The notes under the pieces were generated by a model. It did no database searches and was not told the DNA's origin. It saw nothing but the letters and a program-made list of their open reading frames with translations. A stretch of DNA of 63,715 bases, filler included, from Octopus bimaculoides (lineage: Eukaryota): NCBI RefSeq assembly GCF_001194135.2. It is 5 parts of 4 records of this genome, joined end to end, with 100 filler letters (N's around TTAATTAATTAA, not from the genome) between each part and the next. Parts side by side here need not be neighbours in the genome. Positions count along the whole stretch, not along the records: positions 62,296 to 63,715 come from NC_068990.1; 4 more parts are not named here. The stretch is one strand, 5' to 3'. The translations under genes and the position numbers were made by a program. Shown here piece by piece: positions 62,296 to 63,715 of the stretch (its first letter is position 1; every line of letters starts with the position of its first letter).

Positions 62296-63459
62296 GCGTG
62301 GAATTCAACATCTAAACGTTCCCGCTCTTTTCATTCTCTTTTCCCGGCCGGGCGGCCATGAGCATGGTCATGTCAAGCTGTCTCTCCAGCTTTCCAACTC
62401 TGGGGACGGCTCACAAACAACATTCCGGCGTCTCAGCAACCATGCCTATTTTCCTCCATAAATAAATATTGTTGTGTTGATAGTTCAGAGTTCTGCGTTA
62501 CGTTGTTTATTCCGAAAATAATATAGGAAAGCAGGTGTACACCTAATTGTGTATATACCACTTTCCTATAATTGGTGACCCCGACGTGATTCGTTCATAC
62601 AGTCCTTCTGATCTGTACAGCCAACGTGATCCTGTTTACACAGTTTTTCTTACAAACTGGTGACCCGAATCTTCTCTACATTTGACTTATTGTGTTTTAG
62701 TGGACAATTTCAGTGTTTTTTTTTATTGAACATTTTTCTTCCTTTCAGAGAAAAGAAAAAGAAAACAAACAATCAGACTTTTCAGACTTTTACATTCCGT
62801 GATTTCAGTTCCTGGACAGTGGTCATCACGGTTGTTTTATCATTGTCTCATTTGTTTTTCACTAGGTGGCATTTACTGCCCATTTTACTTGCATGTTTTC
62901 TTTCATCAATTCTTTTGTACATTGCATGCGTGTATCTAACCATTGTCCATCATTTCCTTGAGTTTTTCTTTATATATATTTGTGCCACATTTTCTGCGTT
63001 GGTTTCAGTGGCCATCTTGCCTCAGACGTCCCTCCAAAATTTCTATTTTCGTGCTTCCACACTCAAGGGGGAGCCATTGTAGCGACGTTATTTGGCGCCA
63101 AAATACAGTCGCCATTACTGCGTTTTCATCTACGCATGCGCAGGGAATAGTTCCGGAAGGAACACAGGAAGAGTCCCATGCACATGCGTGGATTTCAACA
63201 TCTAAACGTTCCCGCTCTTTTCATTCTCTTTTCCCGGCCGGGCGGCCATGAGCATGGTCATGTCAAGCTGTCTCTCCAGCTTTCCAACTCTGGGGACGGC
63301 TCACAAACAACATTCCGGCGTCTCAGCAACCATGCCTATTTTCCTCCATAAATAAATATTGTTGTGTTGATAGTTCAGAGTTCTGCGTTACGTTGTTTAT
63401 TCCGAAAATAATATAGGAAAGCAGGTGTACACCTAATTGTGTATAACCACTTTCCTATA
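62296..63459 (+). mobile_element. Miniature non-coding LTR retrotransposon (TRIM-like): 5'LTR, PBS, about 490-bp internal region, PPT, 3'LTR
   Basis: 62296-62570 matches about 63187-63459 with roughly 2 differences. PBS at 62573-62590, PPT AAGGGGGAG at 63065-63073, 3'LTR 63078-63459 (TGTAG...CTATA). Confidence 0.9.
62573..62590 (+). other. Primer-binding site complementary to the tRNA-Trp 3' end
   Basis: TGGTGACCCCGACGTGAT is the reverse complement of the metazoan tRNA-Trp(CCA) 3' end ATCACGTCGGGGTCACCA, and lies 2 nt after the LTR. Confidence 0.88.
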
Positions 63460-63715
63460 GCCTCATTTACAAAAAAGGGGGACATTACAAGGACAGACAA
63501 CACAAAACGTGGGGTACATAGATCGAATTATGAGATGAAATGAGTAAATTTCAATATGATGATGGAATGGCTTACGAGTCCCCCAAAGCTCGCAGTTTCA
63601 TTTCACAGTTTTCTTATACAGTTCTTATTCTTTCATTATTATGTATTGTTTCAGTTCCTCCGCCGTTACGACGCTTGGCAAAGTGTTGTAGCCCACATAT
63701 AACCCACTTAGTTGG

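What the first reader, a model, noticed from the sequence alone, without database searches (positions are those of the whole stretch)
62296..63459. Young TRIM-like LTR retroelement primed by tRNA-Trp
Seen: two almost identical LTRs (3' copy 382 bp), an 18-nt tRNA-Trp PBS, a second PBS-like remnant (TGGTGACCCGA at about 62658) and a PPT. They enclose only about 490 bp of T-rich sequence with no gag/pol similarity. Known: TRIMs are described in plants and a few animals. Inference: a recently mobilised non-autonomous element of about 1.25 kb that uses Gypsy-like machinery in trans. It could instead be a one-off internal deletion.
Basis: partly seen in the sequence, partly recalled or inferred. 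Interest (0 to 1): 0.72.

Follow-up and report, generated by a model that had tools for sequence, protein, structure and literature searches.

The report
Small non-coding LTR retroelement, octopus-like genome
The piece holds one copy of a small LTR retrotransposon (about 1.27 kb if complete) with no genes of its own, probably from an octopus-like genome and primed by tRNA-Trp; this is an ordinary kind of genomic parasite, with one unusual detail: its primer site goes on to match the whole 3' half of the tRNA.

Summary
Two direct repeats differ by one substitution and one 1-bp indel over 275 bp. The left repeat is followed, after an AT spacer, by a perfect 18-nt tRNA-Trp primer binding site. 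The right repeat is preceded by the polypurine tract AAGGGGGAG and an AT spacer. The 507 bp between them are 40% T and show no gag/pol similarity in any frame.

Three limits apply.
- The 5' LTR is cut by the piece edge, so the 382-bp LTR length and the ~1.27 kb total are inferred, and no target-site duplication can be read.
- Copy number and the autonomous partner could not be tested, because no eukaryotic genome collection was available. Family versus one-off deletion therefore stays open.
- At 382/1271 bp the element exceeds the published TRIM size limits.

The only relative found is an Octopus bimaculoides gene model. It matches the 81 bp that end in the PPT and the first bases of the LTR (26/27 aa), which places the host among cephalopods.

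New here: the PBS continues into a 43-nt block complementary to tRNA-Trp positions 76-35 (36/42 matches), including a perfect in-register 12-mer. A stable U5 hairpin abuts the PBS.

Verdict: a new member of a known kind, of modest interest.

The parts
62296..62570 (+). 5' LTR, cut at its 5' side by the edge of the piece (275 of an inferred 382 bp)
   Evidence: Direct repeat of 63186-63459 with 1 substitution and 1 indel
62461..62466 (+). AATAAA inside an ATAAATAAATA run, followed by a GT-rich stretch. Candidate poly(A) signal and/or TATA-like box of the LTR (second copy at 63351-63356). Inferred only.
   Evidence: Motif positions. No functional test was done.
62522..62570 (+). Hairpin at the 3' end of the LTR (presumed U5), ending 2 nt before the PBS. 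The same hairpin is at 63412-63459.
   Evidence: RNA fold dG -20.1 and -20.7 kcal/mol, z = -5.0 and -5.7, 0 of 200 shuffles as stable; inverted repeats I2/I3
62571..62572 (+). AT dinucleotide between the LTR end and the PBS. It is absent after the 3' LTR, as expected if integrase trims 2 nt from each end.
   Evidence: 5' copy ...CCTATA-AT-TGG, 3' copy ...CCTATA-GC (flank)
62573..62590 (+). Primer binding site, perfect complement of the 3' 18 nt of tRNA-Trp(CCA). The match continues to 62591.
   Evidence: Rfam RSV_PBS sub-threshold alignment. The tRNA sequence was recalled from memory, checked as Trp(CCA) by ARAGORN and against the tRF table of PMC7330628.
62573..62615 (+). 43-nt block complementary to tRNA-Trp positions 76-35 (36/42 matches plus a 1-nt insertion). 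It contains a perfect 12-mer, CCTTCTGATCTG (62604-62615), which pairs with positions 35-46.
   Evidence: In-register alignment; 0 of 2000 shuffles reach the score of the part beyond the PBS; register table; no significant similarity beyond position 35
62655..62669 (+). Second, degenerate PBS-like motif AACTGGTGACCCGAA, 85 nt downstream of the first
   Evidence: Repeat family D3; AAYTGGTGACCC found twice against 0.00 expected; 2 mismatches to the PBS 12-mer
62616..63061 (+). T-rich (42% T) non-coding internal domain
   Evidence: Composition; no Pfam family at its cut-off in six frames. The 140-aa ORF is F/L-rich low complexity and its single database relative matches only its C-terminal part (94-140), mostly the last 27 aa.
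62999..63079 (+). PPT-proximal segment conserved in an Octopus bimaculoides gene model (26/27 aa, same stop codon at the LTR start)
   Evidence: P0001 = UniRef A0A0L8GQD0_OCTBM
63065..63073 (+). Polypurine tract AAGGGGGAG
   Evidence: Read directly; followed by CC, AT, then TG of the LTR
63078..63459 (+). 3' LTR, 382 bp, TGTAG...CTATA. The 5' boundary is inferred.
   Evidence: 63186-63459 repeats the 5' copy. The start is inferred from the PPT, the TG and the terminal inverted repeat ATTGTAG / ATTATAG.
63460..63715 (.). 3' flanking DNA, not part of the element. Its first bases (GCCT...) would be the right-hand copy of a TSD.
   Evidence: No significant similarity to the element on either strand

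Best explanation
This is one integrated copy of a small, non-autonomous LTR retrotransposon in a cephalopod (octopus-like) genome. It most likely reached this site by reverse transcription, using proteins supplied in trans by an autonomous LTR retrotransposon that primes with tRNA-Trp.

Shown:
- Near-identical LTRs.
- A perfect 18-nt tRNA-Trp PBS two bases after the 5' LTR.
- A PPT just before the 3' LTR.
- Symmetric AT dinucleotides at both inner LTR borders. The AT is missing at the outer 3' border, which fits integrase trimming.
- A stable hairpin at the end of the LTR, next to the PBS.
- No coding capacity.

Inferred mechanism. Transcription starts in the 5' LTR and ends after the AATAAA in the 3' LTR. 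The RNA is packaged by a partner's Gag. tRNA-Trp anneals to the PBS and possibly also to the downstream 12-nt box. Minus-strand DNA is made and transfers via R. The PPT primes the plus strand. The partner's integrase removes the terminal AT and inserts the DNA.

The 43-nt block complementary to tRNA positions 76-35 has two possible origins. It may be a decayed record of the plus strand once having copied the primer past the usual m1A58 stop. Or it may be an extended primer-template duplex kept by selection.
For: - LTR pair 273/275 identical.
- PBS 18/18 and adjacent to the LTR.
- PPT and AT spacers.
- LTR-end hairpin, z about -5.
- No gag/pol in six frames. Nothing at E <= 0.01 in a six-frame search of 5.8 billion proteins, but that run also failed to return P0001, so it is weak evidence.
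- A relative of the PPT-proximal 81 bp, the PPT and the LTR start exists in O. bimaculoides, so the LTR/PPT junction is not private to this locus.
- The extension of tRNA complementarity is in register and non-random (0/2000).
- Recently active Ty3-like families exist in Octopus vulgaris (PMC13282606), and Gypsy elements that use tRNA-Trp are known in animals (PMC10886601).
- The complete absence of coding remnants in 507 bp weakly favours a lineage selected as non-autonomous over a random deletion.
Against: - No second copy with the same interior was found.
- No TSD can be read because the 5' end is outside the piece.
- No partner element was identified.
- The O. bimaculoides relative diverges from this interior about 130 bp upstream of the LTR. 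That fits a heterogeneous set of deletion derivatives as well as it fits a family.
- Near-identical LTRs are equally expected if a young full-length insertion lost its interior after integration.
- The sense strand is T-rich, which is atypical for LTR retroelements.
Confidence: 0.5

Rival explanations
1. One-off internal deletion. A young autonomous tRNA-Trp-primed LTR retrotransposon lost its whole coding region at this locus. This happened either after integration, or in the single reverse-transcription event that made this copy, by template switching between leader and 3' UTR. It is not a propagating family.
For: - The only relative found shares just the last ~130 bp before the LTR and has a different sequence upstream.
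- No other protein-space trace of the interior was found.
- The 507-bp interior is about the size of a leader plus a 3' UTR.
- LTR identity is equally compatible with this reading.
Against: - Both breakpoints would have to fall outside all coding sequence, since no gag/pol remnant remains in any frame.
- Failure to find other copies means little here, because no cephalopod genome could be searched.
Confidence: 0.33
2. Assembly artefact. The short interior results from a mis-join or collapse in T-rich low-complexity sequence of a longer element, or the two LTRs are one LTR assembled twice.
For: - The piece starts inside a repeat.
- The two differences between the LTR copies are of kinds that sequencing or assembly noise can produce. 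One lies 8 nt from the piece edge and the other is a 1-bp indel in a TATATA run.
Against: - The PBS sits exactly at the inner border of one copy and the PPT exactly at the inner border of the other.
- The AT spacers match, and the outer border has lost its AT. A simple duplication of one LTR would not produce these features.
- A mis-join inside the interior cannot be excluded from the sequence alone.
Confidence: 0.1
3. A small-RNA-derived TRIM (Helenus/Cassandra type, 'TRIMp3'). In these, a tRNA-like sequence supplies an RNA polymerase III promoter.
For: The element does contain tRNA-Trp-related sequence beyond the PBS.
Against: - The tRNA-related block is antisense, lies in the internal domain and is contiguous with the PBS. 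It is not in the LTR in sense orientation.
- ARAGORN finds no tRNA on either strand.
- Rfam gives no tRNA or 5S match even at E <= 10.
Confidence: 0.02

Closest known systems
[quoted passage not shown]
   Same: Two direct terminal repeats. The internal domain begins with a PBS and ends with a PPT. No protein-coding capacity. Presumed mobilisation in trans.
   Different: - Published limits are under 1000 bp overall and 100-250 bp repeats (PMC6934838, PMC10886601). Here the values are about 1271 bp and 382 bp.
- The primer is tRNA-Trp, not the tRNA-iMet of plant TRIMs (plant primer from my own knowledge). biv-TRIM has no canonical PBS at all.
- Copy number and TSD are unknown here.
- None of the papers read describes a cephalopod TRIM.
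LARDs and other non-autonomous deletion derivatives of Ty3/Gypsy elements
   Same: LTR-PBS-non-coding interior-PPT-LTR, dependent on a partner's Gag/Pol.
   Different: LARDs are several kb long (my own knowledge). This element is at the small end. No partner has been identified.
PBS region of avian alpharetroviruses (Rfam RF00467, RSV_PBS)
   Same: Same primer tRNA (Trp), identical 18-nt PBS, and a hairpin in U5 directly upstream of the PBS.
   Different: The score is 19 bits against a gathering score of 47, and almost all of it comes from the PBS itself. There are no viral genes. The host evidence points to a cephalopod. Not a member.
Extended primer-template contacts: Ty1 boxes downstream of the PBS, and lentiviral complementarity up to tRNA position 55
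   Same: Complementarity to the primer tRNA outside the canonical PBS, located 3' of it (Ty1: PMC3592414), or contiguous with it beyond m1A58 (PMC8599865).
   Different: The extra box here is 12 nt, perfect, and pairs with anticodon-stem and variable-loop positions 35-46. The whole block covers the 3' 42 nt of the tRNA. No functional or comparative evidence exists for it.
Helenus / Cassandra / Ajax (TRIMp3)
   Same: Small non-autonomous LTR elements that carry small-RNA-derived sequence. Helenus occurs in molluscs (bivalves).
   Different: In those elements the tRNA or 5S unit is in the LTR in sense orientation and serves as a Pol III promoter. Here it is antisense, internal and contiguous with the PBS.

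Membership tests
LTR retrotransposon (structural definition) | Two long direct terminal repeats | tested here: met
   62296-62570 against 63186-63459, 273/275 identical. The 5' copy is truncated by the piece edge.
LTR retrotransposon (structural definition) | tRNA-complementary PBS directly 3' of the 5' LTR | tested here: met
   18/18 to the tRNA-Trp 3' end, 2 nt after the LTR
LTR retrotransposon (structural definition) | Polypurine tract directly 5' of the 3' LTR | tested here: met
   AAGGGGGAG at 63065-63073, 4 nt before TG at 63078
LTR retrotransposon (structural definition) | Target-site duplication of 4-6 bp flanking the element | not testable with these tools
   The 5' end of the 5' LTR and the upstream flank are outside the piece.
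LTR retrotransposon (structural definition) | Short inverted repeats at the LTR termini (TG...CA type) | tested here: inconclusive
   TGTAG...CTATA. With the AT extensions, ATTGTAG against ATTATAG is 6/7. The 3' terminus is TA, not CA, and the 5' terminus is inferred.
TRIM | No coding capacity for Gag/Pol | tested here: met
   Six-frame Pfam scans negative. Protein searches gave only one non-TE hit; the six-frame search also found nothing but is of uncertain sensitivity.
TRIM | Total length under 1000 bp and terminal repeats of 100-250 bp (PMC6934838, PMC10886601) | tested here: not met
   Inferred length 382 + 507 + 382 = 1271 bp; LTR 382 bp
TRIM | Multiple genomic copies with the same structure and different flanks | not testable with these tools
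   No eukaryotic genome collection was available. DNA scans of the viral, metagenome and prokaryote collections gave 0 hits or a single chance 21-mer.
Helenus/Cassandra (TRIMp3) | tRNA- or 5S-like unit with a Pol III promoter inside the LTR | tested here: not met
   ARAGORN found 0 genes. No tRNA or 5S match in Rfam at E <= 10.
Rfam RF00467 RSV_PBS | Score at or above the gathering threshold (47 bits) | tested here: not met
   19 bits, E = 1.2, model positions 17-65 only

The most novel reading that the evidence does not exclude
The 43-nt block (62573-62615) is a functional extended primer site. It pairs with the whole 3' half of tRNA-Trp (positions 35-76), so this lineage would be primed by a 3' tRNA half, or would stabilise its primer through anticodon-arm contacts. 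The element would also represent the first TRIM-like non-autonomous LTR family described in cephalopods, recently active alongside Ty3-like partners.
Probability: 0.15. Interest if true: 0.55.

Novelty: new member of a known kind. Interest (0 to 1): 0.27.

Why it matters
If the element proves to be multi-copy, it would add cephalopods to the short list of animal groups with TRIM-like elements (ants, cestodes, bivalves, and the Helenus hosts). It would also mark recent LTR-retrotransposon activity in an octopus genome. That is useful for repeat annotation, and for separating TE-derived gene models such as A0A0L8GQD0 from real genes.

The extended tRNA-Trp complementarity is a small but concrete handle on how primer use evolves. 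It is either a fixed trace of read-through past the m1A58 stop or a selected contact outside the PBS. Neither outcome would change how LTR retroelements are understood.

Tried and rejected
1. Exact look-up of the 140-aa and 102-aa window ORFs and of P0001 in the contig collection: not on record. The longer source contig could not be recovered.

2. DNA pattern scans.
- LTR end + PBS: 0 hits in viral and metagenome contigs.
- PPT/LTR junction 21-mer: 0 in viral and prokaryotic genomes. One metagenome contig (L001) matched, but only over the 21-mer itself, so it is a chance hit.
- LTR 24-mer: 0 in prokaryotic genomes and in viral contigs.
- PBS + 12-mer box: 0 in viral contigs.

3. A six-frame concatenated protein query (2333 aa, stops written as X): nothing at E <= 0.01. 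It did not even return P0001, so its sensitivity is doubtful and it counts as weak negative evidence only.

4. P0001 used as a query: it hits only itself. A full HMMER scan of 1.84 billion representatives with the 140-aa ORF returned only P0001.

5. The 3' flank as a related element: no significant similarity to the element on either strand.

6. A decayed tandem duplication after the two PBS-like motifs: only the 12-mer aligns.

7. A full-length antisense tRNA copy: similarity beyond anticodon position 35 is not significant (744/3000 shuffles). A model in which the whole tRNA was copied and a second PBS follows it is therefore not supported.

8. A tRNA-like or 5S-like unit, ribozyme or any other Rfam family: none.

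9. Supplementary tables of PMC13524379, for mollusc PBS types: not held.

Full report
**What is in the piece**

Only 62296-63715 is real sequence. Two direct repeats, 62296-62570 and 63186-63459, differ by one substitution (62303 A / 63193 T) and one 1-bp indel (62556, in a TATATA run) over 275 aligned bases.

The left repeat starts at the first base of the piece, so it is cut by the edge. In the right copy the repeat can be followed further left, to a TG at 63078. This TG sits four bases after the polypurine tract AAGGGGGAG (63065-63073).

This left boundary is inferred, not observed as the end of a repeat. Three things support it:
- the PPT;
- the terminal inverted repeat (ATTGTAG at the start, ATTATAG as the reverse complement of the end, 6/7);
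- a symmetric pair of AT dinucleotides, one between PPT and LTR (63076-63077) and one between LTR and PBS (62571-62572).

The AT is missing after the outer end of the 3' LTR, where the flank begins GC. This is what integrase trimming of two terminal bases produces (established retroelement biology; inference here).

**Primer binding site and its surroundings**

TGGTGACCCCGACGTGAT (62573-62590) is a perfect complement of the 3' 18 nt of eukaryotic tRNA-Trp(CCA). I recalled the tRNA sequence from memory and checked it in two ways. ARAGORN folds it as tRNA-Trp(cca). A published tRNA-fragment table lists both ATCACGTCGGGGTCACCA and ACTCCAGATCAGAAGGCTGCGTG (PMC7330628).

Rfam's RSV_PBS model aligns to 62537-62591, but far below its threshold (19 against 47 bits, E 1.2). 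This reflects the shared primer, not membership.

Directly upstream, the last 49 bases of the LTR (62522-62570, and 63412-63459 in the other copy) fold into a hairpin. Its energy is -20 to -21 kcal/mol, z = -5.0 and -5.7, and none of 200 shuffles is as stable. The single indel between the LTR copies lies in its internal bulge.

The plus strand continues to match the reverse complement of tRNA-Trp beyond the PBS, in register:
- 19 contiguous matches (tRNA positions 76-58);
- then 11 positions with 5 matches and one inserted base (positions 57-47);
- then a perfect 12-mer, CCTTCTGATCTG (62604-62615), which pairs with positions 46-35. That is the variable loop, the 3' strand of the anticodon stem and two anticodon bases.

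None of 2000 shuffles of the sequence downstream of the PBS reaches the observed score. The 12-mer occurs only once in the piece. Beyond position 35 the similarity is no better than chance (744 of 3000 shuffles). The block is therefore 43 nt long, 36/42 complementary to the 3' 42 nt of the tRNA.

Three of the six mismatches are transitions, and two of these turn a CpG into TpA. Given 17/23 matches beyond position 58, a run of 12 is expected about 10% of the time. Uniform decay of an old copy and selective conservation of a box therefore cannot be told apart.

Both mechanisms have precedents. Plus-strand synthesis normally stops at m1A58, and lentiviral genomes stay complementary to their primer up to position 55 as a second stop (PMC8599865). 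Ty1 RNA pairs with its primer at boxes downstream of the PBS (PMC3592414).

**The second PBS-like motif**

AACTGGTGACCCGAA (62655-62669) lies 85 nt after the first. AAYTGGTGACCC occurs twice, against 0.00 expected. Nothing else aligns between the sequences that follow the two motifs. The sequence just before the second motif does not resemble the 5' part of the tRNA. Its origin is unresolved. An old duplication of the LTR-end/PBS junction is the simplest reading.

**The interior**

The interior (62571-63077, 507 bp) is 40% T on the sense strand, and 42% without the tRNA block. AT skew reaches -0.46.

The longest ORF is 140 aa (62660-63082), F/L-rich and of low complexity. No Pfam family reaches its cut-off for any ORF or for any of the six full frames, and nothing retroviral appears.

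**Relatives elsewhere**

A word-indexed search of 5.8 billion proteins and a full HMMER scan of 1.84 billion representatives returned one hit each, and it was the same protein: Octopus bimaculoides A0A0L8GQD0, 85 aa, uncharacterised.

Its last 27 residues match the translation of 62999-63079 at 26/27 and end at the same stop codon, which is the TAG of the LTR start. The match fades over the 16 residues before that. The first 42 residues match nothing in the piece in any frame.

This shows that the PPT-proximal segment, the PPT and the LTR start exist at another locus in an octopus genome. It is the only evidence for the host.

It also shows that at least one relative has a different interior. 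One caveat applies: the gene model could be spliced.

The protein hits only itself and is not in the contig collection. All DNA scans of the available viral, metagenome and prokaryote collections were empty, apart from one chance 21-mer. No eukaryotic genome could be searched, so copy number, TSDs and the autonomous partner remain untested.

**Interpretation**

The anatomy is that of a bona fide LTR retroelement without genes. An assembly duplication of one LTR would not place a PBS at one inner border and a PPT at the other with matching spacers. A mis-join inside the T-rich interior cannot be excluded from the sequence alone.

Two real-element readings remain: a lineage that propagates in this short form, and a single deletion derivative. 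The evidence between them is thin.
- The absence of any coding remnant slightly favours the short-form lineage.
- The divergent interior of the octopus relative slightly favours the deletion derivative.

I put the lineage reading at about 0.5, the one-off deletion at about 0.33 and an artefact at about 0.1.

Trans-mobilisation by a Ty3/Gypsy-type partner is inference. It rests on three points: animal TRIM-like elements resemble Gypsy at the PBS, at least one animal Gypsy family uses tRNA-Trp (PMC10886601), and O. vulgaris has nine recently active Ty3-like families (PMC13282606).

**Comparison with what is known**

Functionally the element works like a TRIM. As a member it fails the published size criteria of under 1000 bp overall and repeats of 100-250 bp. 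'Small non-autonomous LTR retrotransposon' is the accurate label.

It is not a Helenus/Cassandra-type element. No sense-strand tRNA or 5S unit is present in the LTR, and the tRNA-related block is antisense, internal and contiguous with the PBS.

TRIM-like elements are already documented in ants, cestodes, bivalves and, as Helenus, in six animal phyla. One more in a cephalopod is a new member of a known kind.

The O. vulgaris repeat census already lists six small 'other LTR' families with single recent insertions. I give 0.27, and most of that is for the extended tRNA-Trp complementarity.

Noticed in passing
window 63471-63490: Twelve bases after the 3' LTR, the flank has a purine run AAAAAAGGGGGA followed by CATTACAAGG. 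This resembles the element's own PPT and LTR start (AAGGGGGAGCCATTGTAG). The element may sit beside the PPT/LTR junction of another, related LTR element (nested insertion), or this may be chance.
   Followed up: partly
window 62303 and 62556: The only substitution between the LTR copies lies 8 nt from the piece edge and creates a GAATTC site. The only indel is in a TATATA run. Both could be sequencing or assembly noise, in which case the LTRs are identical.
   Followed up: no
window 62616-63061: The sense strand of the interior is 42% T. In my experience LTR retroelement sense strands are usually A-rich (own knowledge, not tested here), so this interior may derive from foreign or antisense sequence. 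Its origin is unknown.
   Followed up: partly
window 62461-62466 and 63351-63356: AATAAA lies inside an ATAAATAAATA run and is followed by TGTTGTGTTG. It could serve as the poly(A) signal and/or a TATA-like box. That would imply a very short R region and a U5 of about 80 nt that is mostly the hairpin.
   Followed up: no
P0001 (UniRef A0A0L8GQD0_OCTBM): This annotated Octopus bimaculoides 'uncharacterized protein' ends in sequence that is the PPT-proximal end of an LTR element, and it stops at the LTR's first bases. It is probably a TE-derived spurious gene model.
   Followed up: partly
L001:2793-2813: Metagenome contig Ga0209018_1003166 contains the 21-mer CTCAAGGGGGAGCCATTGTAG but shares no other similarity with the piece. 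It is a chance match.
   Followed up: yes
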